From the NCBI RefSeq assembly GCF_000315625.1, contig NW_005434652.1, positions 152,348 through 216,347 of the forward strand: a DNA stretch of 64,000 bases, written 5' to 3'. Position 1 is the first letter of the stretch. The number at the start of each line of letters is the position of its first letter. The notes below the pieces were generated by a model. It was given only the letters and a program-made list of their open reading frames with translations. It ran no database searches and had not been told where the DNA came from. Made by a program: the position numbers and the translations under genes. Shown here piece after piece: positions 37,301-49,040 of this stretch. Origin of the DNA: Guillardia theta CCMP2712. Its lineage: Eukaryota; Protista; Cryptophyta.

Positions 37301-37852
37301 ATCTACTATGAGCGGAGATATGAGGAGAACGAGTATGTTGCTGCGAGAAAGTTTGATCTTTTCTCTTGATGACTTGCGACGTGTAGGCAACAGCACAATC
37401 AGCAGAAGGAGAAGCAGCAAGAGAAGGAGCAGCAGCGACGTACGTCTAGTTCATATCAAGCTTCTTGTCATTATTCTTTGCCATCCTGACCGTAACATCC
37501 AAACAAGTGAATCAACTGTCTTTGAACACATACTGAATACCAGGCACGGTGATGCTATTCAATATGATGTCCGACCCGGCACATGCCATCATGAGTAGCT
37601 GTAGCGGCCCGTGCGGCCCGGCCGGGCCGGGCAATCACTGCCGTTGAAATCACTACTGTCAACGGTTTGACTGCGTACCTGACAAGCCATGACTTGAGAG
37701 GGCGACTCCGAGGAAACTTGAGGAGCTCTTGTCAGCACGTCACGCCAGCCAATCATGACAGTTTCCCTTTTAAATGTTCCTGCACATCACTTGCTCACCC
37801 CTCCAGTCTGCTCCTGTTTCCCCTTGTAGCTCGCGAACCAACCAGCCTCGTG

Positions 37853-38245
37853 ATGGCGAGGACCTTCGCCATCACTATCTCTCATCTCTCCTTCTTCCAT
37901 CCTTCCCCGACACCCAGCAAGATCGTTTACCGCCCCCCCCTCCTCCGGCCTCGCCCTTCCCCTGACCAAACATCGAAGCCCGCCCAACGGTCTTCGCTGC
38001 CTCAAGATGCATGTCTCCGAAGCATCCTCGATGCTCGCCGGCTCGCTTCCAAGCCTCCAGCAATCAACACCAAGACCCTGGTCCGCAGCCACTCCTCCGA
38101 GGACGTCACGCGGGGTGCCATCATGCTCCTGAGCGGCAGCCTGGAGGACTGTACGGGGAGGCACACACACAATGGCGTAGGCGGGCCAGGGAGGAGGCAG
38201 GAGGAGGCAGGGGTATGTCGCGCGAGGTACTCTGACAAGAAGTAG
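37853..38245 (+). CDS. Small hypothetical protein A, copy 1 (DACLRSI..AR / LVRS.S..DVT family)
   Basis: ORF conserved in frame in the duplicate at ~39748, and paralogous to the convergent ORF B. Confidence 0.5.
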   Translation: MARTFAITISHLSFFHPSPTPSKIVYRPPLLRPRPSPDQTSKPAQRSSLPQDACLRSILDARRLASKPPAINTKTLVRSHSSEDVTRGAIMLLSGSLEDCTGRHTHNGVGGPGRRQEEAGVCRARYSDKK

Positions 38246-38535
38246 TAAACCCTCCGTCATTGGACCTTTGCCTCACTCACTCGCCATGTAAGCCTCTGCC
38301 GGCTGCGCTCGCAGCTGCCGAGGCGGATCTCAGCGTTGCCGTCTCCTGGCCCTGGCGAGGAGCTCCCTTGCTCTGCATGAGGAGTCGTGCCGCTGCGAGG
38401 GGTCGCATGGATCAGGTTTACTCAGTCATACCCTAGCTCTCACACCCATATCGCTATCACACTCGCCTCCTCTCTCCTTCCTGTCTGTCTTGCCCGCAGC
38501 CTCCCGTCGCTGTCCTCATGGTCCTGCCGCCTTGA

Positions 38536-38748
38536 TCACGCCTGCTCCTCCAGCAGTACCAGCGCACTGGCAGTCACGTCCGTCATCGACGAGCTCCGCA
38601 CGAGCCCTCTGATCTTTGTCTCCCGCTTGCTTGGACCGATCCCGCTGCCGCGCTCCCTCGCCTCCATGATACTCCGCAAGCAGGCGTCCTCCGCCACGGG
38701 AGAGGAGGGAGGCCGGGGCTCGGAAGAGACTGCGGATTGCTGGGCCAT
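38536..38748 (-). CDS. Small hypothetical protein B (70 aa), paralog of A, convergent
   Basis: MAQQSAV...EDACLRSIMEAR...GLVRSSSMTDVTASALVLL; preceded by the acceptor-like CCCCTGCAG. Confidence 0.5.
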   Translation of the reverse strand: MAQQSAVSSEPRPPSSPVAEDACLRSIMEARERGSGIGPSKRETKIRGLVRSSSMTDVTASALVLLEEQA

Positions 38749-39747
38749 GTAGGCTTGCTGCAGGGGGTTGAGGGGGAAGGCTTTCCGACGGTGCAGGGGC
38801 TGGGGGAGGAGGACAAGAGAGGACGGGGAGGGCATGGAAACAGTGAGGAAGGGAGGCATCGGGGAGAGGCTGAGAAGCTTGGAGGAGAGAGGCAGACGGG
38901 GGGGAGGAGGGGGGGTGGATATGAGGGGAGAATGGATGAAAGCAAGGGAGGGGGAGGGGGGGAGACTACAATGACACGAGCAGGAGGCAAGGTACAAGGC
39001 AGGGAGGGAGGAGATGTGAAGGAGAAGTAGGGGAGGAGTAGGGGGAATGTATCAGGGAAGAAGGCAAAACATTTTGCAGGGGAAAAATCTGGAGAGTTTT
39101 TATTTTAAGACCAATCTCGGGAACGTGTCTGAATCGTTGCTCTTTTTCGACTGTTTGGACCGTGACTGATGACCGACCCACCCCTTAGGACCCATGAAGA
39201 GATTTCTGACTCCCTACAACCTCCTCCGGAGTTCGCTTCCCCTCCCTCTATTGGGGAGTAGGAGGGGGGTGAATGTGAGGGGAGGATGGATGAAGGCAGG
39301 GGAGGGGGTGGGGAGGAGACCAGACTGGCGATCGGACTGGAGGAGGAGCGCGAGTAGGCAACGTATAAGGTAGCGATGCGGGGATATCGGAAGAGGAGAC
39401 GAAAAGATGCTTGTTCTCAGTTTGATGACATCGATGTTTACGAATAGTCGCAAAGAAATCTCTAGACGATATCCCTCCACCTCCTTGTCTCCCCGATCAT
39501 GGTTCTTTACTACTCAGCCGGTGTGGGAAATGTTTTCAGGAAAAGGGCAAAACAGACCGAGGGGAAATCTTGAGATCCAAGAAGTCAATGGGTGGTGGGA
39601 GGGGGCAAAATCCCTCACAAACCCCTTAAGAGAGCAGAGATTTGACTCCCTACAACCCCCTCCGGAGTTCGCCCCTCCCCATCTACTGCCCGCGCCTCCG
39701 CCTTCCCTCCTTCGTCACGAACTTCGGGTCGAAGCGCATCTCTCGTG

Positions 39748-40149
39748 ATGGCGAGGACCTTCGCCATCACTATCTCTCATCTCTCCTTCTTCCATCCTTC
39801 CCCGACACCCAGCAAGATCGTTTACCGCCCCCCCCTCCTCCGGCCTCGCCCTTCCCCTGACCACACATCGAAGCCCGCCCAACGGTCTTCGTTGCCTCAA
39901 GATGCATGTCTCCGAAGCATCCTCGATGCTCGCCGGCTCGCTTCCAAGCCTCCAGCAATCAACACCAAGACCCTGGTCCGCAGCGACTCCTCCGAGGACG
40001 TCACGCGGGGTGCCATCATGCTCCTGAGCGGCAGCCTGGAGGACTGTACGGGGAGGCACACACACAATGGCGTAAGCGGGCCAGGGAGGAGGCAGGAGGA
40101 GGCAGGCCAGGGAGGAGGAGGCAGGGGTATGTCGCGCGAGGTACTCTGA
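39748..40149 (+). CDS. Small hypothetical protein A, copy 2
   Basis: Almost identical to 37853..38245, with small indels near the C-terminus. Confidence 0.5.
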   Translation: MARTFAITISHLSFFHPSPTPSKIVYRPPLLRPRPSPDHTSKPAQRSSLPQDACLRSILDARRLASKPPAINTKTLVRSDSSEDVTRGAIMLLSGSLEDCTGRHTHNGVSGPGRRQEEAGQGGGGRGMSREVL

Positions 40150-40429
40150 CAAGAAGTAGTAAACCCTCCGTCATTGGACCTTTGCCTCACTCACTCGCCA
40201 TGTAAGCCTCTGCCGGCTGCGCTCGCAGCTGCCTAGGCGGATCTCAGCGTTGCCGTCTCCTGGCCCTGGCGAGGAGCTCCCTTGCTCTGCATGAGGAGTG
40301 GTGCCGCTGCGAGGGGTCGCATGGATCAGGTTTACTCAGTCATACCCTAGCTCTCACACCCATATCGCTATCACACTCGCCTCCTCTCTCCTTCCTGTCT
40401 GTCTTGCCCGCAGCCTCCCGTCGCTGTCC

Positions 40430-40605
40430 TCATGGTCCTGCCGCCTGCTCCTCCAGCAGACTCCGCACAAGCCCTCGCCGAGTGCTTGGACCGAGCCTGC
40501 TGCCGCGCTCCCTTGCCTCCATGATACTCCGCAAGCAGGCGTCCTCCGCCACGGGAGAGGAGGGAAGCCGGGGCTCGGAAGAGCCCGCGGAGAACTGGGG
40601 CATGT
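40430..40605 (-). pseudogene. Degenerate copy of ORF B
   Basis: Deletions remove the SSMTDVTASALV segment and the 11 nt containing the stop codon; several small indels. Confidence 0.65.
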
Positions 40606-40798
40606 ACTACCGGCTTGCTGCAGGGGGTTGAGGGGGAAGGCTTTCCGACGGTCACCGCAGGGGCTGCCGGGGCCGTCCGGGGGAGGAGGACAAGAGAGGA
40701 TGGGGAGGGCATGGGAACACTGACAGTGACTCAGTGAGCCTCCGGGAGGGTCGAAGGCATCGGGGATAGGCTGAGGAGCTTGGAGGAGAGAGGCAGAC

Positions 40799-43700
40799 TG
40801 GCTTTTTGAAATGGCGTGTACTGAGGGGAAATGCGCCTACTCGCCACTTTCATTTCGGTGGTGACGGCGAGAGCGAGGGAACCGCGACAAGGGAAGCGTG
40901 AAGATCCGCTCTCACTTCCATCATCACTGTGAGACATCATGGCGCGGCACAAGCGGCCTGCCATCCTCCGTCATCACAGTTCTGTTGTTGATCCTCTACT
41001 GACTGGCACGCCGGGCTCGTCGTCCCACTTTCCTCATACAGGCCTTGTGTCCCAAGAGAGCTCCTCTGACTCTGAGCCCCGCTCACAGCAGGAACCCCTA
41101 CGGACTCCTGACATGCTGGAAGGGCAATCTCGTTCTGCAGCGTCTCCTCCGCAGGATGACTTTGCCTCCTCCGCCGCTGGATCTGGAGGAGGTTCGGGGA
41201 ACCAAAGACCTCGGAAGCAGGCAAGATTTCGCCGATCCATCTCCCAGAGGACACCCACCGATCAGCCTACGGTCAATCCTACACCCCCACCGCCCCCTCC
41301 TCAACCGGCAAATCTTTTCCCAGAAGACCCTGGCACGCAATCTAGCGCAGCGGCTTACTTTCATAATCTGCGTCCGCAAGACATGCCTTGTGGTACGTCG
41401 AATTGGCACAGAGCCCTCCCTCTCTTTGCTCAACAGGGACCACATAAGCTTCCGGCACTCCTGGCTCGTAATCCTTCCATTACAACCATCAAACACCCCA
41501 ATCGCCAGACGATTGATAAATGGAAGAGTGCGCTACAGTTTACGTTAGACCTGCTACAAGGTTACCCTGACTTGCATTGCGAGGAAGCTAAGATTATCCG
41601 GAGCTTGTGGCATTGTCTCCCACTGCTCCTGCTGAGAGTGAATCCAGTTCTTGCAATCTCGCGACAAAACCGAGATGTGAGCTACCGTATCCACCATTTC
41701 CTCCAAGGGCGTTGGGAGACATTGCTGAAACTAGAAGAGGGTGTTTCTTTTGACCAAGACGGCCCAGCGGTTGGCAGCGGTGGAGATCCGCAGGATGTCA
41801 CGCAGCAGCCCACGGCGGGACTAACTGGGTCGGGACGAGGCACGAGACCGCGGGCACCGCAAGGTAGGCGCCAACAACCTAACCGTCAAAATGCAGGTCG
41901 CCCACAAGGACCTGACCGTGCGAGAGCGGGCGTGCAGCAGCCAGTGATGGAGAGCGAGCAGTTGGAGAAAAAGAAAATCCTCTCGGCTGTTGAGCATTAC
42001 CAAAATCGGGATATGAAGAAAGCTCGACAGGCGCTTGTGGGCCATGGCCTCTCCCCAGATCCATTTGAGCAGCTATGGCAGCAAACTCGTGAGAAATTTC
42101 CGACGAGACTGGAACCCATTCCTCCAACGCTCCTAGACGCAGTCGGCTCCTCAAGGCAAATGCTAAGTGCTCAGCTCGACGATGCCATCGCCGATGAACC
42201 GGCCTCATTGCTTGACAAGATTTTAGATCAGCGAGAGGTAGGGAAATTCCTGCGGCGATTCACTGCTTCCTCGGCCCCTGATCAATTTGGTTGGCGACCG
42301 TTCCAGCACCTGCGACACATTCTCAGACTGCATGATGATCACAAACAGCGATACATTAACCTCATATTGAAGCCGATCGCGCTGGGAATCCCTTCGGGCG
42401 CTTTCCTCGAGGAATACACCAGAGGGGGGCGATTCATTCCTGCTGCCAAGTCAGTGGAAAAGAGCGGAATCCGACCTATTGTGATAGGGGACCTGGAGCG
42501 AAGGATTGTGTCTAGCATCTTCTGTCGTTTCTACCGAAAATCTTTGGAGAGCCACTTCACCCTCAGTCACTCTCGGGTCCTGCAATTTTGCGTGGGTCTG
42601 GAGGAAGGTTGTCTCAAATTCTGCAAGACCATCGAATGCCTGTTAGGACCCCATTCTTTTGCCAACCCATTCACAGACCAGGGCGAAGGTGAGTCTGATA
42701 ATTTTGATCCCACGGTAATCATCATGATCGACGCAAGAAATGCCTTCAATGAGATCTCTCGCCAACGGCTATTTGACATCCTCCTTGCTCCCGAGCATCG
42801 TTGTGAGAACTTTTCCCAAGGAGTCCTTCCGTATGTTCATCAATATTATGGCCAGGCAGGTAAGTTATTTCTGAAACATCAGCGAGAGACTCGGGCTTTT
42901 TCGGCCACCACGGGAGTTTCTCAGGGGGACCCCTTGGCGATGGCTCTCTTTGCGCACACCACCTTCCCTTCCCTGGTCAAAGTCGCAGAGACCTTTCCCG
43001 ACTGTGTCTTCCCGGCCTATGCGGATAACATGGCTGTTATTGGAAAGCTCTCAGTTGCCGCACAGGCTACTGCATCGCTGGTTGATACTTTAAAACAAGA
43101 GCTAGGATTGGAGATTCAACCCAGGGATTCGCAGATATTCTCCTCGTCCTGGTGTGAACTTCAATCTAGTCAGCAACAAGCCATCCAAGAGCATATTTGC
43201 AGTAGGTACCCGGGCTTGCAGCAGTTTGCCTTCCGCGGCCAGGGGATCATCCTGGGAGGTATCCCGATAGGATCTCAGTCCTTCCAGCAAGAGTTTATCA
43301 CTGCCAAGGTGAATGCCCTCAATGCTGAATTGACCCAGTTGGAACAATTTCCCATTGCGTTGGGTCTCAAGCAGCTCTTGAAAACGACCCACGTTCCCAC
43401 CCTCCAATATTTCTTGCGTGGAATCTCCCCGGCCTTGACCGCTGCCCAGTGCAAGTGCTTTGACGTCGCGAATCTCCGTCTCCTGGCGAAGGTGTTTCAG
43501 TGGCCACAGAACCAGGCACAGGAGGGTTCATCTGTCCTGCAACCTGCCCCTGGCACCCCTCCATCTGACCTTCAGTTCGCCTACTTCAAACGTCAGTTGC
43601 CTTATAGTGCTGGAGGAGATGGGTTCACCCCGCAGGAGGGCGTGGCCTACACCGCATTCTGGTCGGCGACTGCCAAGTTTCTCAAATGGGCGGGTGAAAT

Positions 43701-45160
43701 TGCCATCTTCCAGCATTGGACTTTCCCTACACCGCCACTCTTCCACCGGATCAATTCTGACACTGAGCTTCGAATCCGCCAACCGCAGCAAGCGGACGCT
43801 GGGGATGTTGTCCCCATGCTTGCTGCCTTCTTGGACACTCACAGGCACTTGATGGAGCAGGGCATCTCGGCGTACACCTCCTTGGCGGAGCTTCCTCAGG
43901 CGTGCGACAATGGCTGGATCCCCTCGCCTGAATTATTTGGGACGTCGGGCAGTGCGCTTTTCATCCCCGCCCAGCGGGAGCTCACGGCTCAGTTCCTCTC
44001 GGAGTTTCCCCGGTTCCGCAGTATTCGGGCTCACCTTTCAGAGCGCCAGAGATCTTTGTTGGCACACCACTCCAGCTTCTCTACTCCCCTTCGAGTACCA
44101 GGCCACCCGGTTGATGAACTTCTGTCTCAGTTTACCCCTCAGCGCACGATTTGGCACTCGACTATGGAAAGTACAAACCTTGGGATCTTTGAGCAGCAGC
44201 CCATCAGCTTGGTGGCTGCCGCTGACAAGTTTCTTCATGGATTGCCGGTTGACCTCCCGCCGCACTGCGATCGATGCCATCATCTTCTTCGTCATCCTGG
44301 GGGGACCACACACATGGCAACCTGCAGGCACCGCAGCCAGTTATGGACTGATGCGCATGAGAAGTGCAATGCCGTCCTCAGTACCCTCATCAAAGATTCC
44401 GGAGTGAGATGCCGCGTCCACGTGCAAGGCGTACCCGGCACCAGGCAGAACGTTTCCCAACATGGCCCTGAAGATCATCATGTAGGGGACTTTGAACTTC
44501 CACAACTGATGGCTACTGGCGGCGGATGGCATGGGTTAATCCTGGACTTCAGCATGTCACATGTTTTTGACAATGATGGAATACCGGACCTCGCTCGGAG
44601 CAAACTGCAAGCGGCAGCACAGCGGAAGATCCGAGGGCATCGTAATGCATATGCTCAGCACGTCCCGCCAAAGGCCTTTCTTCCCATCATCGCCAGCACT
44701 GATGGCCTCTTGCAGGACGATGCGTTGCGCTTTCTGTGGTGGCTGGCGGATCGCTCGGCGAACAAGGAAACGGCAGCGCTGGATGGTCTCTCGGCCTCGC
44801 AAGACGTCTCAGGTGATCCGACTTGCAAACGCATTCGGTCCAGGGTCTTCCGTCAGCTCAAGGCCTCCCTGTCCTACGCTGCCATCATCGCGGGTGCATC
44901 CCGGTATGCGTCTCATTCCTTCGGCGGCGGCCACCGCGACATCGCTGGCATGGCCGCGCGGGGGACTTGTCCTGCGCGCCGTTAAGTGAAGGTATCAGTT
45001 AAGTTTGGGGGACAGCAGTCGGCAGGTTTAGGTTTGGTTCTCGCTGTCTTTTCTCTTCTCGCCGTTTGGCCTGTGCGACAGTGTCAGGGTCAAGCCTCCT
45101 CGACTCTCCTGATTGTCCTCGTACTGATCTTTAACTTAACTTTGAGTAAAAGTTTTTTGT
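40799..45160 (+). mobile_element. CRE-clade non-LTR retrotransposon (RT + restriction-like endonuclease), apparently full length
   Basis: Boundaries are defined by comparison with the empty site in copy 1: AGGCAGAC | element | (C)GGGGGGGG...GGGTGGATATGA. Confidence 0.85.
40939..44985 (+). CDS. Retrotransposon ORF: reverse transcriptase + zinc knuckle + RLE endonuclease (1348 aa)
   Basis: SAPDQFGW; KSGIRPIVIGD..RR; QFCVG..EG; IDARNAFNEISR; GVSQGDPL; YADN; LGGIPIG; CDRC...H...C; GDFEL...LDFSMSH...RKIRGH...FLPIIASTDG. Confidence 0.92.
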   Translation: MARHKRPAILRHHSSVVDPLLTGTPGSSSHFPHTGLVSQESSSDSEPRSQQEPLRTPDMLEGQSRSAASPPQDDFASSAAGSGGGSGNQRPRKQARFRRSISQRTPTDQPTVNPTPPPPPPQPANLFPEDPGTQSSAAAYFHNLRPQDMPCGTSNWHRALPLFAQQGPHKLPALLARNPSITTIKHPNRQTIDKWKSALQFTLDLLQGYPDLHCEEAKIIRSLWHCLPLLLLRVNPVLAISRQNRDVSYRIHHFLQGRWETLLKLEEGVSFDQDGPAVGSGGDPQDVTQQPTAGLTGSGRGTRPRAPQGRRQQPNRQNAGRPQGPDRARAGVQQPVMESEQLEKKKILSAVEHYQNRDMKKARQALVGHGLSPDPFEQLWQQTREKFPTRLEPIPPTLLDAVGSSRQMLSAQLDDAIADEPASLLDKILDQREVGKFLRRFTASSAPDQFGWRPFQHLRHILRLHDDHKQRYINLILKPIALGIPSGAFLEEYTRGGRFIPAAKSVEKSGIRPIVIGDLERRIVSSIFCRFYRKSLESHFTLSHSRVLQFCVGLEEGCLKFCKTIECLLGPHSFANPFTDQGEGESDNFDPTVIIMIDARNAFNEISRQRLFDILLAPEHRCENFSQGVLPYVHQYYGQAGKLFLKHQRETRAFSATTGVSQGDPLAMALFAHTTFPSLVKVAETFPDCVFPAYADNMAVIGKLSVAAQATASLVDTLKQELGLEIQPRDSQIFSSSWCELQSSQQQAIQEHICSRYPGLQQFAFRGQGIILGGIPIGSQSFQQEFITAKVNALNAELTQLEQFPIALGLKQLLKTTHVPTLQYFLRGISPALTAAQCKCFDVANLRLLAKVFQWPQNQAQEGSSVLQPAPGTPPSDLQFAYFKRQLPYSAGGDGFTPQEGVAYTAFWSATAKFLKWAGEIAIFQHWTFPTPPLFHRINSDTELRIRQPQQADAGDVVPMLAAFLDTHRHLMEQGISAYTSLAELPQACDNGWIPSPELFGTSGSALFIPAQRELTAQFLSEFPRFRSIRAHLSERQRSLLAHHSSFSTPLRVPGHPVDELLSQFTPQRTIWHSTMESTNLGIFEQQPISLVAAADKFLHGLPVDLPPHCDRCHHLLRHPGGTTHMATCRHRSQLWTDAHEKCNAVLSTLIKDSGVRCRVHVQGVPGTRQNVSQHGPEDHHVGDFELPQLMATGGGWHGLILDFSMSHVFDNDGIPDLARSKLQAAAQRKIRGHRNAYAQHVPPKAFLPIIASTDGLLQDDALRFLWWLADRSANKETAALDGLSASQDVSGDPTCKRIRSRVFRQLKASLSYAAIIAGASRYASHSFGGGHRDIAGMAARGTCPARR

Positions 45161-45193
45161 CGGGGGGGGTTAGGACTGAGGGGGGTGGATATG

Positions 45194-45780
45194 ACCCGGC
45201 CCGGGACCGTGCCAGACTGAGACTCGCCGTCGGAGGCCGCCGCTGCCGGGCCGGACCGCCCGGCCGGGCGCCGCCCGGCCGCCGCGTGACTGCCAGTTTG
45301 ACTCACTCGGAGGCCTGACTCACTGAGTCACTGGAGTAACTTGAAGGGAGTCGGACCACTGGCCGGGCCGGATTCGCATACGCCGGGCAGTGATAATAGT
45401 CATACTAATCGGACTCAGTCGGATGATTCAATGCCGCGGGCCGAAATTGAATTCGCCGCGCGGCCCCGGCGCCGGCCTGGTGGCGCCGTCACAGTCACCG
45501 GCCCGCGGCCGGCCAGGGCCAGGCGGGCCGCCGCGCCGCCGTCGCCTCATCAGTGTCGCCGTCACGCGGCCCGGCCCGCGGCTCAGAGTCGGGTACGCGG
45601 GCCCGGACTCAGTTCAACGCCCGGCCCCCACGCCGTTCGGGCCGGGCCGGGCCGCGGTACCTCAGTCGCGTACGGTACGGTACTCCCGGAGCCTCGGAGT
45701 CCGGCGGCGCCTCAGTACAGTCCTCAGAGTGTCAGAGCTGCGCCAGGTCCGGCCCAGTCGCCGGAGGATCATCGGATCAT
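45194..45780. other. GC-rich, palindrome-dense low-complexity tract (CCGG/GGCC, TGACTCA, GTAC, GATC words)
   Basis: For example CTGACTCACTGAGTCA, GCCGGGCCGG, GTACGGTACGGTAC, GGATCATCGGATCAT. Confidence 0.7.
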
Positions 45781-46699: not shown

Positions 46700-49040
46700 T
46701 GAACGACAATGAAAGCACACTTGGAGAGAGCTCAGAATCAGTCTCACTGTCGGCTGGCATAGGACTTTTTAGCGATTGTATCATGATACCCAGCACTCAA
46801 GGAGCTTCTTCATTCACGAGGTTTCAAGACTCTAGGACCGTCACATCCAGCGAGATGCCCAATTACATGACGTTGCAACGCAGCTCTATGGGGATTAGGA
46901 TCATCCAGGACGGCAATGAGGTTGTAAAAGAGGAATCAGGTTCTTCTTTTTGACGATGCATCTTCACACGTTGAAAGACAACAGCAGGCCTGAAACAAAT
47001 TATGAAAGACATTCGGGAGCAGTTGGAAAAATCAACCCATGTGGTCAATCAGGCCTCCACTAGGGATTCGGATCGAGTGGATTCAGAAACAATGAATTCA
47101 TACCCTGAAGTGAAACCTTACGACATACAGTCGTTGCGATCAAGATTCGTAAGTAATTTGAAATATCTCTGCAAATTTTGACAAGGAGGTGCAGGAAAGG
47201 GAAGTCTCGAGTACTGAGCGCATGTCATGGAAACGAGAGTCTAATCCTGGATTTAGAGATCTTGGAAATGATAGATCATTCAGAGATCTCGGAAATGATA
47301 GGTCATTCAAAAATCTTGGAAATGATAGATCGCCCAGAGAATTTGGGAATGATAGGTCAGTCAGGGATTATGGCAATGATAGGTCAGTCAGGGATTATGG
47401 GAATGATAGGTCATTCGGCGATTATGGGAATGATAGGTCATACTTTGTCCCAGAGGTCTATGTAGAACCAAAGATGAGGTGGCAGATACATGCTCCTGTT
47501 ACTCCTGACAACACGAGCAACTCTGCTCATCGCCGTCCGCCTGTCGAGCTGGCAATGAGGCCGCCCTCTCAACCGGCAACGCAAGTCAGTCAATCAGAGC
47601 CAGCATCAAGTAACAGCTCAGTGACTCGGAAGTCTGCTTTTGAGCTGCAACAACATTCAAATCAAACCTTCTATCCGTTCAACCATGCTTCCGCACAGAG
47701 GAATGTGCATTTACCGCCACCGATCAACTATCAACCAGATTTCCAGACGGGTATGCTGGAAAGGGAAAGATTCCATGAATTTCACCCAGGTTGTTTGTAA
47801 TGTCATTCCTCGACATTCAAGCTGATGATGTGTTGCAGGTCTTCCGCGGGGCTGGGAGATGAAAGTCGACTCGCCTTCAGGGAAGGTTTTCTATGTCAAC
47901 CATTCTTTGCGAGCAATCTCATGGGAAAGACCCAAACTCGAAACGCCTTTGAGCTCAGAGAGAGAGATGAGTCAGTTGCCGCCTCAAAGACCTGTGGAAG
48001 ACAAGCCGACGCCTGTAGTGGAACCCGTGGAAGAGAAGCGAACGCCGCCTCAGAGAATTGTTGAAGAGACACCAGCACCAACTCAGAAGCTTGACAATCC
48101 TTTTGACGGGTCCGAGATTTTGAATAGAATATCCTCCAACGTGCAGAACATCCTCATGAAACTGTCAAATGCTTCGAGCGGCTCAGAAAACGATGCTGCA
48201 AACAATCTTCGTGACGATTCGAACAAGGAGCAGCAAGATTACAACTTGAAATGGCGACTTGAGGAATTCAAGATCAAAACCTCCATCAAGGAGAGAATCA
48301 GCGCTGAGAGCGCGCTGCTTGATGGGAAGATCGACCTCAGGCGATCGTACAACTTCGCGACTTCCAATACGTTTACAAGGTTTGGTGTTCATTAATGACG
48401 AAATTCTCGTGATGATATGTACTGTAGCTTTGAAGATATCGATTTTGCCCCGAAGTCAAGGAAATGGCAAAATGATGGGCATGAGAACGACAATCATGTT
48501 CGAACAAGACCGATAACCAACATGCCAACCACACAGCTGTTGCGGTCTAGTCTGGATTCGTCCAAGTTCGCAGAGTTTCAGGTTTGGAAGTTCTGAAACA
48601 CATCCATGCATTTGAAGGTTTTGCAGGCTAGTTTCATGACACACTCGTCGTCGTCCAACCTTCCTCAGGTGCACAGTCAGGAGAAGAAGAAGGAAAGCCC
48701 ACACATGGACACACTGACGTTACTTCTCGATGCGAGAGAAAAACTTCGTGAACACCACAAGTCGAGCCTGACAGCAGAGCTTTCCGATGAACCCTTGCGG
48801 CCCACGTACACGGGAAGGAGCTTCGAACAGGAGATGGAATACTCGCGGTGGGTGAAGCAAGAATTGTTGGAGATCCCCATCGACGAGGATGAGGTTGGCA
48901 ACGCGACTCGGAGTGACATGGAGACAACATTGGATGCTCACACTGCGACTTCGAAGGACACGACGAAGAAAAATTCGGACATGCCGTCAAGCTCAGAGAC
49001 AAGCAGCAGCACATCCCACATGCTCATGTGGCAAGTGTGA
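46700..49040 (+). CDS. WW-domain protein with 9-aa tandem repeats, multi-exon
   Basis: GWEMKVDSPSGKVFYVNHSLRAISWERP after the acceptor at ~47839. The start is approximate. Confidence 0.65.
47252..47440 (+). repeat. Coding minisatellite, 7 x 27 bp (FRDLGNDRS / VRDYGNDRS)
   Basis: AATGATAG(G/A)TC recurs every 27 bp. Confidence 0.95.

What the first reader, a model, noticed from the sequence alone, without database searches (positions are those of the whole stretch)
40799..45161. CRE-type retrotransposon with both filled and empty target sites in view: no poly(A) tail, no clear TSD
Seen: cassette copy 1 reads GAGAGAGGCAGAC-GGGGGGG-AGGAGG-GGGGGTGGATATGA (38885-38924). Copy 2 reads GAGAGAGGCAGAC (to 40798), then 4.36 kb of element, then C-GGGGGGGG-TTAGGACTGA-GGGGGGTGGATATGA (45161-45194). 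This fixes the ends as TGGCTTTTTGAAA... and ...GAGTAAAAGTTTTTTGT, with at most a 1-bp duplication and no A-tail or 3' tandem repeat. Established: many CRE/RLE elements are site-specific and typically show poly(A) or simple-repeat tails with TSDs. Inference: this family may integrate bluntly next to G-runs and have an atypical 3' end. The single ORF is uninterrupted, which suggests recent insertion.
Basis: partly seen in the sequence, partly recalled or inferred. Interest (0 to 1): 0.8.

Follow-up and report, generated by a model that had tools for sequence, protein, structure and literature searches.

The report
Dispersed tail-less LINE of Guillardia theta
The stretch is an intact, recently inserted copy of a jumping gene (an R2-like LINE retrotransposon) of the alga Guillardia theta. 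Its family has no poly(A) tail, lands almost anywhere, and usually copies only its last 20-70 bases. Its copying enzyme has an unusual active-site motif (YADN instead of YADD).

Summary
Window 40799-45160 is a 4.36-kb element with one open 1348-codon ORF. It sits in the second copy of a local two-copy duplication, and the first copy (38897/38898) is the empty site. Independent DNA contigs bridge both junctions.

It is a restriction-like-endonuclease (RLE) LINE: RT, then a CCHC knuckle, then a PD-(D/E)xK nuclease. The nearest solved relatives by sequence and by fold are R2 proteins. Assignment to the CRE clade could not be tested, and CRE's defining traits are absent.

The family is dispersed, not site-specific:
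- About 1,890 copies of its 3' end against about 15 copies of its 5' end.
- Median insert about 38 bp.
- Every copy ends at ...AACTTTGAGTAAA, followed by 0-16 variable bases and never poly(A).
- Target-site duplications (TSDs) are real but variable, 0-12 bp. TSDs of 7 bp or more occur in 17 of 87 copies, against 1.9 expected.

New points:
- RT motif C reads YADN. The xxDN state defines a well-supported clade of unnamed protist and metagenome relatives.
- The ORF is under purifying selection (pN/pS 0.2-0.3).
- Antisense transcripts of related copies are spliced.

Other first-stage notes on this genome had already flagged ultra-short cDNA patches without poly(A) on other DNA.

The parts
37847..38924 (+). 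Copy 1 of the local duplicated segment; the empty target site lies between 38897 and 38898
   Evidence: Direct repeats D2-D9; alignment with copy 2 after removing the element; only two copies in the genome
39742..40798 (+). Copy 2 of the duplicated segment, part upstream of the insertion
40799..45160 (+). Full-length RLE-type LINE copy (4362 bp)
   Evidence: both junctions bridged by DNA contigs
40799..40938 (+). 5' UTR. The terminus (T)GGCTTTTTGAAATGGCG is shared by other full-length copies.
   Evidence: no Rfam ribozyme; fold z-score -0.8
40939..44985 (+). Single ORF, 1348 aa: N-terminal region without a recognisable domain, RT, linker, CCHC, RLE
42712..43143 (+). Core of the reverse transcriptase domain (Pfam RVT_1, aa 592-735). 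Motif A is at 42727-42750 and motif B at 42913-42933.
43018..43029 (+). RT motif C reads YADN. The Asn lies where R2 and other RTs have the second Asp of YxDD.
44266..44325 (+). CCHC zinc knuckle (C-x2-C-x12-H-x3-C) preceding the nuclease
44482..44640 (+). PD-(D/E)xK restriction-like endonuclease core (GD, LILD and QRK motifs)
   Evidence: Profile alignment to the R2 RLE; AlphaFold model with pLDDT 84.5 whose six best PDB matches are all R2 proteins
44986..45150 (+). 3' UTR up to the family-wide conserved end ...TTTAACTTAACTTTGAGTAAA
   Evidence: 30 contigs diverge just after 45150
45151..45160 (+). Junction bases AGTTTTTTGT. AGTTTT(TT) is templated in the young subfamily (5 copies); the last 2-3 bases have unknown origin.
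45161..45194 (+). Rest of copy 2 of the duplicated segment downstream of the insertion; homology to copy 1 ends at 45194

Best explanation
Window 40799-45160 is an intact, very young copy of a dispersed, non-site-specific LINE of the cryptophyte Guillardia theta. It belongs to the restriction-like-endonuclease (R2-like) branch of non-LTR retrotransposons. Its single 1348-aa protein carries RT, a CCHC knuckle and a PD-(D/E)xK nuclease.

Inferred mechanism, by analogy with R2 target-primed reverse transcription:
- The nuclease nicks one DNA strand at loosely defined sites, with a weak T|GA preference.
- The RT, bound to the element's own 3' UTR, starts cDNA synthesis at or a few bases beyond ...GAGUAAA, without a poly(A) tract. 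This gives a fixed end plus 0-16 ragged bases.
- Synthesis usually aborts after 20-70 nt, which gives about 1,900 tail stubs against about 15 full 5' ends.
- Second-strand cleavage is imprecise, so TSDs range from none to 12 bp.

The window copy landed in the second copy of a local duplication with a TSD of at most 1 bp.

Shown: anatomy, domains, copy structure, ends, TSD statistics, junction support by reads, and purifying selection. Inferred: the order of biochemical steps, and any link between the YADN active site and low processivity.
For: - Organism and genome: (100% match to GUITHDRAFT_110080).
- Domains: Pfam RVT_1. A family profile hits R2 proteins best (E 1.8e-16) and LINE-1 ORF2p less well (3.8e-11), with CCHC and RLE motifs aligned. 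The C-terminal model has pLDDT 84.5, and its top six PDB folds are all R2.
- Copy numbers: the 3' 21-mer occurs 1,890 times, the reversed control 0 times. The 5' 162 bp occurs at 15 places. DNA depth rises about 200-fold from body to tail.
- Insert lengths: 21-232 bp, median about 38 bp, in 87 sampled copies.
- Flanks after GAGTAAA are unrelated and there is no poly(A).
- TSDs of 7 bp or more occur in 17/87 copies against 1.9 expected; 8 bp or more in 14 against 0.8.
- Weak T|G(A) preference at the nick site: T at -1 in 13/22, G at +1 in 12/22.
- Youth: 3 and 5 coding differences from L002 and L005.
- Selection: pN/pS 0.20-0.31 against older subfamilies.
- The ORF is intact in the window copy and in L003.
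Against: - No biochemical data; every mechanistic step is by analogy with R2.
- About two thirds of the sampled stubs show no TSD of 5 bp or more. Part of them could arise without the element's own nuclease, or the TSDs could be too short or too decayed to see.
- The nick-site preference rests on 22 sites.
- The origin of the 0-16 junction bases is not settled. They could be templated read-through, microhomology priming or untemplated addition.
- Sense-strand transcripts of the element were not shown; the spliced RNA contigs seen are antisense.
Confidence: 0.85

Rival explanations
1. One reading: a CRE-type, site-directed element that integrates bluntly next to G-runs and has an atypical 3' end as a family property.
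For: The window copy lies right before a G8 run and has a TSD of at most 1 bp. There is no A-tail.
Against: More than 100 other copies have unrelated flanks without G-runs. TSDs of 6-12 bp occur significantly more often than expected. There are no spliced-leader or other RNA-gene targets. No N-terminal zinc finger was found.
Confidence: 0.04
2. The tail stubs are mostly not endonuclease-driven insertions. They would be patches of element cDNA or RNA captured during repair of random double-strand breaks, so the full-length copy and the stubs have different origins.
For: 25 of 87 stubs show no match of 4 bp or more, and 54 of 87 none above 4 bp. Junctions often carry filler bases. Tail-to-tail and inverted tail arrangements exist.
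Against: A clear excess of 7-12 bp TSDs (17 against 1.9 expected) and a T|G bias at their left edge point to staggered enzymatic cleavage. All stubs are 3'-coterminal at the same base, as expected for target-primed synthesis.
Confidence: 0.15
3. The about 1,900 short copies are a separate non-autonomous (SINE-like) family that merely shares the LINE's 3' tail.
For: The ratio of tails to bodies is very high. There is a peak at 33 bp (10/87 copies start at CTCGTACTG).
Against: Lengths form a continuum from 21 to more than 4,000 bp, all collinear with the LINE 3' UTR and ORF. No shared non-LINE 5' head was seen.
Confidence: 0.04
4. The lack of an A-tail and of a TSD is erosion of this one copy, or an assembly artefact.
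Against: The same end occurs in 1,890 places. Contigs from independent runs bridge both junctions without differences. The copy differs from L002 by 3 coding bases.
Confidence: 0.01

Closest known systems
R2 elements (R2Bm, R2Tg, R2Pm; solved structures 8gh6, 9dou, 9nl3, 9nl2)
   Same: Single ORF with RT, then CCHC, then a PD-(D/E)xK nuclease. Best sequence and fold matches. A defined 3' UTR end that does not depend on poly(A), variable target duplications or deletions, and 5'-truncated copies (the R2 properties are from my own knowledge).
   Different: Not in 28S rDNA and not site-specific. No N-terminal zinc finger or Myb domain detected. Motif C is YADN, not FADD. Truncation is far more extreme.
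CRE clade (CRE1, CRE2, SLACS, CZAR of trypanosomatids)
   Same: RLE-type LINE of a protist with a single large ORF.
   Different: CRE elements insert at one position of spliced-leader genes, carry poly(A) tails and have long fixed TSDs (my own knowledge; PMC4640811 states that CRE is mostly target-specific). None of this is seen here. Phylogenetic placement is untested.
HERO clade
   Same: PMC4640811 describes it as the RLE clade containing many non-specific retrotransposons, so it behaves like this family.
   Different: Known from animals (my own knowledge). No reference sequence was available, so relatedness is untested.
NeSL / Utopia-like elements
   Same: RLE LINEs. Some relatives of the window ORF carry an N-terminal cysteine protease (Peptidase_C48 in P0188, UCH in P0035), as NeSL-type elements do (my own knowledge).
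   Different: The window ORF has no protease domain, and the family has no RNA-gene target.
Second RLE-LINE family of G. theta (GUITHDRAFT_103214, P0156), probably the self-nesting family of earlier scan notes
   Same: 34% identical ORF, same architecture, YADN motif, and a non-poly(A) end that also contains AGTAAA (...CTGCCAGTAAATCC).
   Different: Its copies cluster in nests on scaffolds, whereas the window family's tails are spread at about one per 46 kb.

Membership tests
RLE-type non-LTR retrotransposons (R2 supergroup) | Reverse transcriptase domain with motifs A, B and C | tested here: met
   Pfam RVT_1 at E 6e-8. The profile aligns to the R2 RT at E 1.8e-16. Motif C is YADN rather than YxDD.
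RLE-type non-LTR retrotransposons (R2 supergroup) | CCHC knuckle plus PD-(D/E)xK nuclease C-terminal to the RT, and no N-terminal APE domain | tested here: met
   Motifs align to the R2 RLE. Model pLDDT is 84.5 and the six best PDB folds are all R2. No APE or other Pfam hit in the N-terminal 439 aa.
RLE-type non-LTR retrotransposons (R2 supergroup) | Footprints of target-primed reverse transcription: 3'-coterminal, 5'-truncated copies | tested here: met
CRE clade | Site-specific insertion into spliced-leader (mini-exon) genes | tested here: not met
   Flanks of more than 100 copies are unrelated. No RNA family was found in the window.
CRE clade | Poly(A) tail and a fixed, long TSD | tested here: not met
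   No A-tract at any 3' junction. TSDs range from 0 to 12 bp.
CRE clade | N-terminal C2H2 zinc finger(s) | tested here: not met
   No zinc-finger hit at E<=10 in aa 1-439.
CRE clade | RT groups with CRE1, CRE2, SLACS and CZAR in a phylogeny | not testable with these tools
   No named reference sequences could be fetched. All relatives found are unnamed.
R2 clade proper | 28S rDNA target; N-terminal zinc finger and Myb DNA-binding domains | tested here: not met
HERO clade | RLE LINE without target specificity | tested here: met
   (behaviour only)
HERO clade | RT groups with HERO references | not testable with these tools
   No reference sequences available.
NeSL clade | Accessory cysteine protease; target in SL or other small-RNA genes | tested here: not met
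   No protease in the window ORF. The protease is present only in distant relatives.

The most novel reading that the evidence does not exclude
The window element may represent an undescribed, ancient clade of protist RLE LINEs. In this clade the second catalytic aspartate of RT motif C is an asparagine (YADN, FADN, WADN or FSDN). The enzyme is nevertheless active and under purifying selection. Its altered active site could be the cause of the family's extreme habit of making 20-70-nt cDNA stubs with ragged, tail-less 3' ends.
Probability: 0.3. Interest if true: 0.7.

Novelty: new variant of a known kind. Interest (0 to 1): 0.55.

Why it matters
- It gives a clean, well-bounded reference copy, with an empty site, of a LINE family that has written about 1,900 small patches into the Guillardia theta genome, roughly one per 46 kb. 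Such patches matter for annotation and for reading intergenic sequence in cryptophytes.
- It adds a non-site-specific, poly(A)-independent RLE LINE from a lineage where none is described in the literature I could search.
- The conserved YADN motif, in an element that is evidently mobile, is a natural experiment on the RT catalytic triad. D-to-N at this position is normally used to kill RTs. By analogy, the GDN motif of mononegavirus polymerases shows such a change can be tolerated (my own knowledge).
- If the substitution lowers processivity, it would link one residue to the genome-wide pattern of truncation.

Tried and rejected
- 5' ribozyme: no Rfam hit at the gathering threshold (whole window) or at E<=10 (40600-45400); the only two weak hits are unrelated families. 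MFE z-scores are -0.8 for the 5' UTR and -1.4 for the 3' UTR, which is not significant.
- Naming the clade: one word search with the ORF and one with a profile, one exhaustive HMMER search, two cluster look-ups and one Atlas search returned only unnamed metagenome ORFs or G. theta hypothetical proteins. An RT tree with CRE, R2, NeSL, R4 and HERO references could therefore not be built.
- Literature: no paper in the held library links Guillardia with RLE LINEs, and none mentions YADN or FADN in an RT.
- Antisense gene hypothesis: after removing the observed minus-strand introns, the longest antisense ORF is 126 aa, so there is no antisense protein.
- Strand of the raw RNA reads (X24) could not be calibrated.
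- The look-up of encoding contigs found no record for P0004.
- My first attempt to orient the second family's loci failed and was redone with tblastn.
Full report
**1. Observation.**
- A roughly 1.08-kb segment is present twice: 37847-38924, and 39742-40798 plus 45161-45194. It occurs nowhere else in the 87-Mb genome.
- Copy 2 is interrupted after ...GGCAGAC (40798) by 4,362 bp. This insert starts TGGCTTTTTGAAA and ends ...GAGTAAAAGTTTTTTGT (45160).
- With the insert removed, the copies align across the junction. The 39 bases upstream are almost identical. Downstream come a G-run and an exact 14-mer (GGGGGTGGATATGA), after which homology ends.
- At most one base (C) is duplicated.
- Contigs of two public DNA runs bridge the 5' junction, and one bridges the 3' junction, without differences.
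- The ORF 40939-44985 is open for 1348 codons.

**2. Organism.**
The genome is 87.1 Mb in 669 contigs. A 100% protein match to GUITHDRAFT_110080 identifies it as the nuclear genome of Guillardia theta CCMP2712.

**3. What the protein is.**
- Pfam finds RVT_1 at aa 592-735.
- A profile of the ORF and 11 relatives hits R2 proteins best in the PDB (9nl3 at 1.8e-16; 9dou). LINE-1 ORF2p scores less well (3.8e-11).
- The same alignment lays the C-terminal C-x2-C...H-x3-C, GD, (L)D and K motifs on the R2 CCHC and RLE motifs (KPDLIF, VVDVTV, EKVRKYK).
- An AlphaFold model of aa 1090-1348 has pLDDT 84.5 and pTM 0.81. Its six best Foldseek matches are all R2 proteins (E 7e-5 to 7.5e-3). Next come PD-(D/E)xK cap-snatching nucleases and the Prp8 nuclease-like domain.
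- The N-terminal 439 aa have no zinc finger, Myb, APE or protease hit.

The element is therefore an RLE-type (R2-supergroup) LINE.

**4. The family.**
- A whole-element search finds at least 73 pieces, nearly all 5'-truncated and 3'-coterminal. Alignments stop at window 45150.
- The terminal 21-mer TTTAACTTAACTTTGAGTAAA (up to 2 mismatches) occurs 1,890 times against 0 for the reversed control. The first 162 bp occur at only 15 places.
- DNA depth in two runs rises about 200-fold from body to tail. Thirty contigs diverge immediately after 45150.
- In 87 sampled tail copies the insert length is 21-232 bp, with a median of about 38 bp and a peak at 33 bp.
- The listed places are spread over all large contigs, and flanks are unrelated. 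The family is not site-specific.

**5. The ends.**
- The 5' end: (T)GGCTTTTT(T)GAAATGGCG is shared by the window copy, L002/L112, L116 and, with small changes, L003/L113. Each has different upstream DNA.
- The 3' end: no copy has poly(A) or a simple repeat.
- After GAGTAAA the bases decay to background within about 6 positions (n=108):

| Bases after GAGTAAA | Share of copies |
|---|---|
| G | 60% |
| GA | 31% |
| GAA | 16% |
| GAAG | 10% |
| GAAGTC | 5% |

- A minor variant, GAGTAAAAGTTTT, occurs in 5 copies with different flanks, including the window copy and its 99.5%-identical relative L002. In this variant AACTTT/AAAGTT can pair as a 6-bp hairpin followed by a T-run.

**6. TSDs.**
I allowed the 5' copy to end within 4 nt of the 5' junction and the 3' copy to start 0-20 nt after GAGTAAA.

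| Exact repeat length | Observed (of 87) | Expected from shuffled pairing |
|---|---|---|
| 7 bp or more | 17 | 1.9 |
| 8 bp or more | 14 | 0.8 |

(Counts.)
- Examples are 10 bp (L047), 12 bp (L056) and 8 bp (L049, L060).
- Between GAGTAAA and the 3' TSD copy lie 0-12 filler bases in the sampled stubs and up to 16 in L002.
- Many stubs show no TSD.
- Longer copies behave alike. L002 has GCCAG(TG) after a filler of T-then-A runs, L006 has GTTCG and L028 has a 9-mer.
- At the left edge of 22 TSDs of 6 bp or more, T precedes in 13 and G starts the TSD in 12. This suggests a weak T|G(A) nick preference, and it may partly explain the G/GA enrichment after GAGTAAA.
- The window copy, with a TSD of at most 1 bp, lies at one end of a broad distribution. 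It is not typical of a blunt mechanism.

**7. Activity and selection.**
- The window ORF differs from L002 by 3 coding bases and from L005 by 5.
- Against older subfamilies pN/pS is 0.20-0.31.
- The ORF is intact in the window copy and in L003, and broken in L002, L004 and L006.

**8. The YADN motif.**
- Motif C reads FPAYADNMAVIG in all six copies checked. It aligns to AFADDLVL of R2.
- Among 144 relatives covering the motif, 57 have xxDN and 85 have xxDD.
- I built a maximum-likelihood tree of 112 RT domains without the motif columns. The DN sequences form one clade (SH-aLRT 99) of 37 rows: 36 DN plus one DD, P0035, which carries a UCH domain.
- Apart from G. theta, the members are unnamed metagenome or Logan ORFs.
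- I found no paper mentioning such a motif in an RT.
- Whether a named clade (CRE, R4, HERO, NeSL) already has it could not be checked.
- A link to the very short cDNAs is my inference only.

**9. Relatives.**
- G. theta has a second family (P0156, 34% identity) with the same architecture and YADN. It has at least 162 nuclease-region matches, often clustered on a scaffold. Its end is non-poly(A)...CTGCCAGTAAATCC. This is probably the self-nesting family of earlier scan notes.
- A relative from a Logan assembly (P0003, L126) ends in a (TG)n tract.

**10. Expression.**
- Contigs of a run guessed to be RNA (X8) cover the body but not the flanks.
- They carry at least 9 short skips (43-63 nt) whose ends are CT..AC on the + strand. 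That corresponds to GT..AG introns on the minus strand, with G|GT donors and (C/G)AG acceptors.
- These contigs differ from the window copy at many sites, so they come from related copies.
- After splicing there is no long antisense ORF.
- No sense transcript was demonstrated.

**11. Verdict.**
- It is partly wrong or untested: the CRE clade was not shown, there is no G-run targeting, TSDs exist in the family, and there is no ribozyme evidence.
- Earlier first-stage notes on other pieces of this genome (s1-443998, s1-444072) had already flagged ultra-short cDNA patches and fixed non-poly(A) ends. My counts support those notes independently.

Noticed in passing
window 41483-44590 (minus strand): RNA contigs of run X8 show at least 9 short introns (43-63 nt) with GT..AG ends on the strand antisense to the ORF, including alternative acceptors. 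They derive from diverged related copies. No antisense ORF longer than 126 aa results. Antisense LINE RNA appears to be transcribed and spliced.
   Followed up: partly
window 40640-40798 and 45161-45260 versus 38780-38990: Copy 2 of the duplicated segment differs from copy 1 mainly by many small GC-rich insertions, e.g. GGT to GGTCACC and GTGA to GTGACTCAGTGAG. This fits the rule 'target + C + reverse complement' described in earlier scan note s1-436962. The density rises right beside and downstream of the element.
   Followed up: partly
L127-L134 (G000 C53, C8, C331, C423, C72, C75, C76): A second, more body-rich RLE-LINE family of G. theta (P0156-like, YADN) ends at ...CACTTTTTACCTTCTGCCAGTAAATCC without poly(A). 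Its copies cluster several per scaffold region.
   Followed up: partly
L126:4900-4961: The closest non-Guillardia relative (P0003, Logan contig) ends in a (TG)n tract. This is either a simple-repeat tail or a microsatellite target.
   Followed up: no
L083, L091, L076, L066 (G000 C5, C4): New copies inserted into older tails at ...GTCCTCG(T)|ACTGA. Also seen are tail-to-tail tandems and a 9-nt micro-insertion (TGAGTAAA) flanked by an 8-bp duplication. Ten of 87 stubs start at the same base, 33 nt from the end.
   Followed up: partly
P0035, P0188 (metagenome relatives): Related RT-RLE ORFs carry an N-terminal ubiquitin C-terminal hydrolase (UCH, E 4e-29) or a Peptidase_C48 domain. P0035 is the only xxDD member inside the DN clade.
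   Followed up: no
window 45135-45160: In the young subfamily the 3' end can form a 6-bp hairpin (AACTTT/AAAGTT, loop GAGTA) followed by a run of 6-7 T. This resembles a terminator-like signal.
   Followed up: no
window 47228-47470: Seven to nine tandem 27-bp units (AGAGATCTTGGAAATGATAGRTCATTC-like) lie 2 kb downstream of the element.
   Followed up: no
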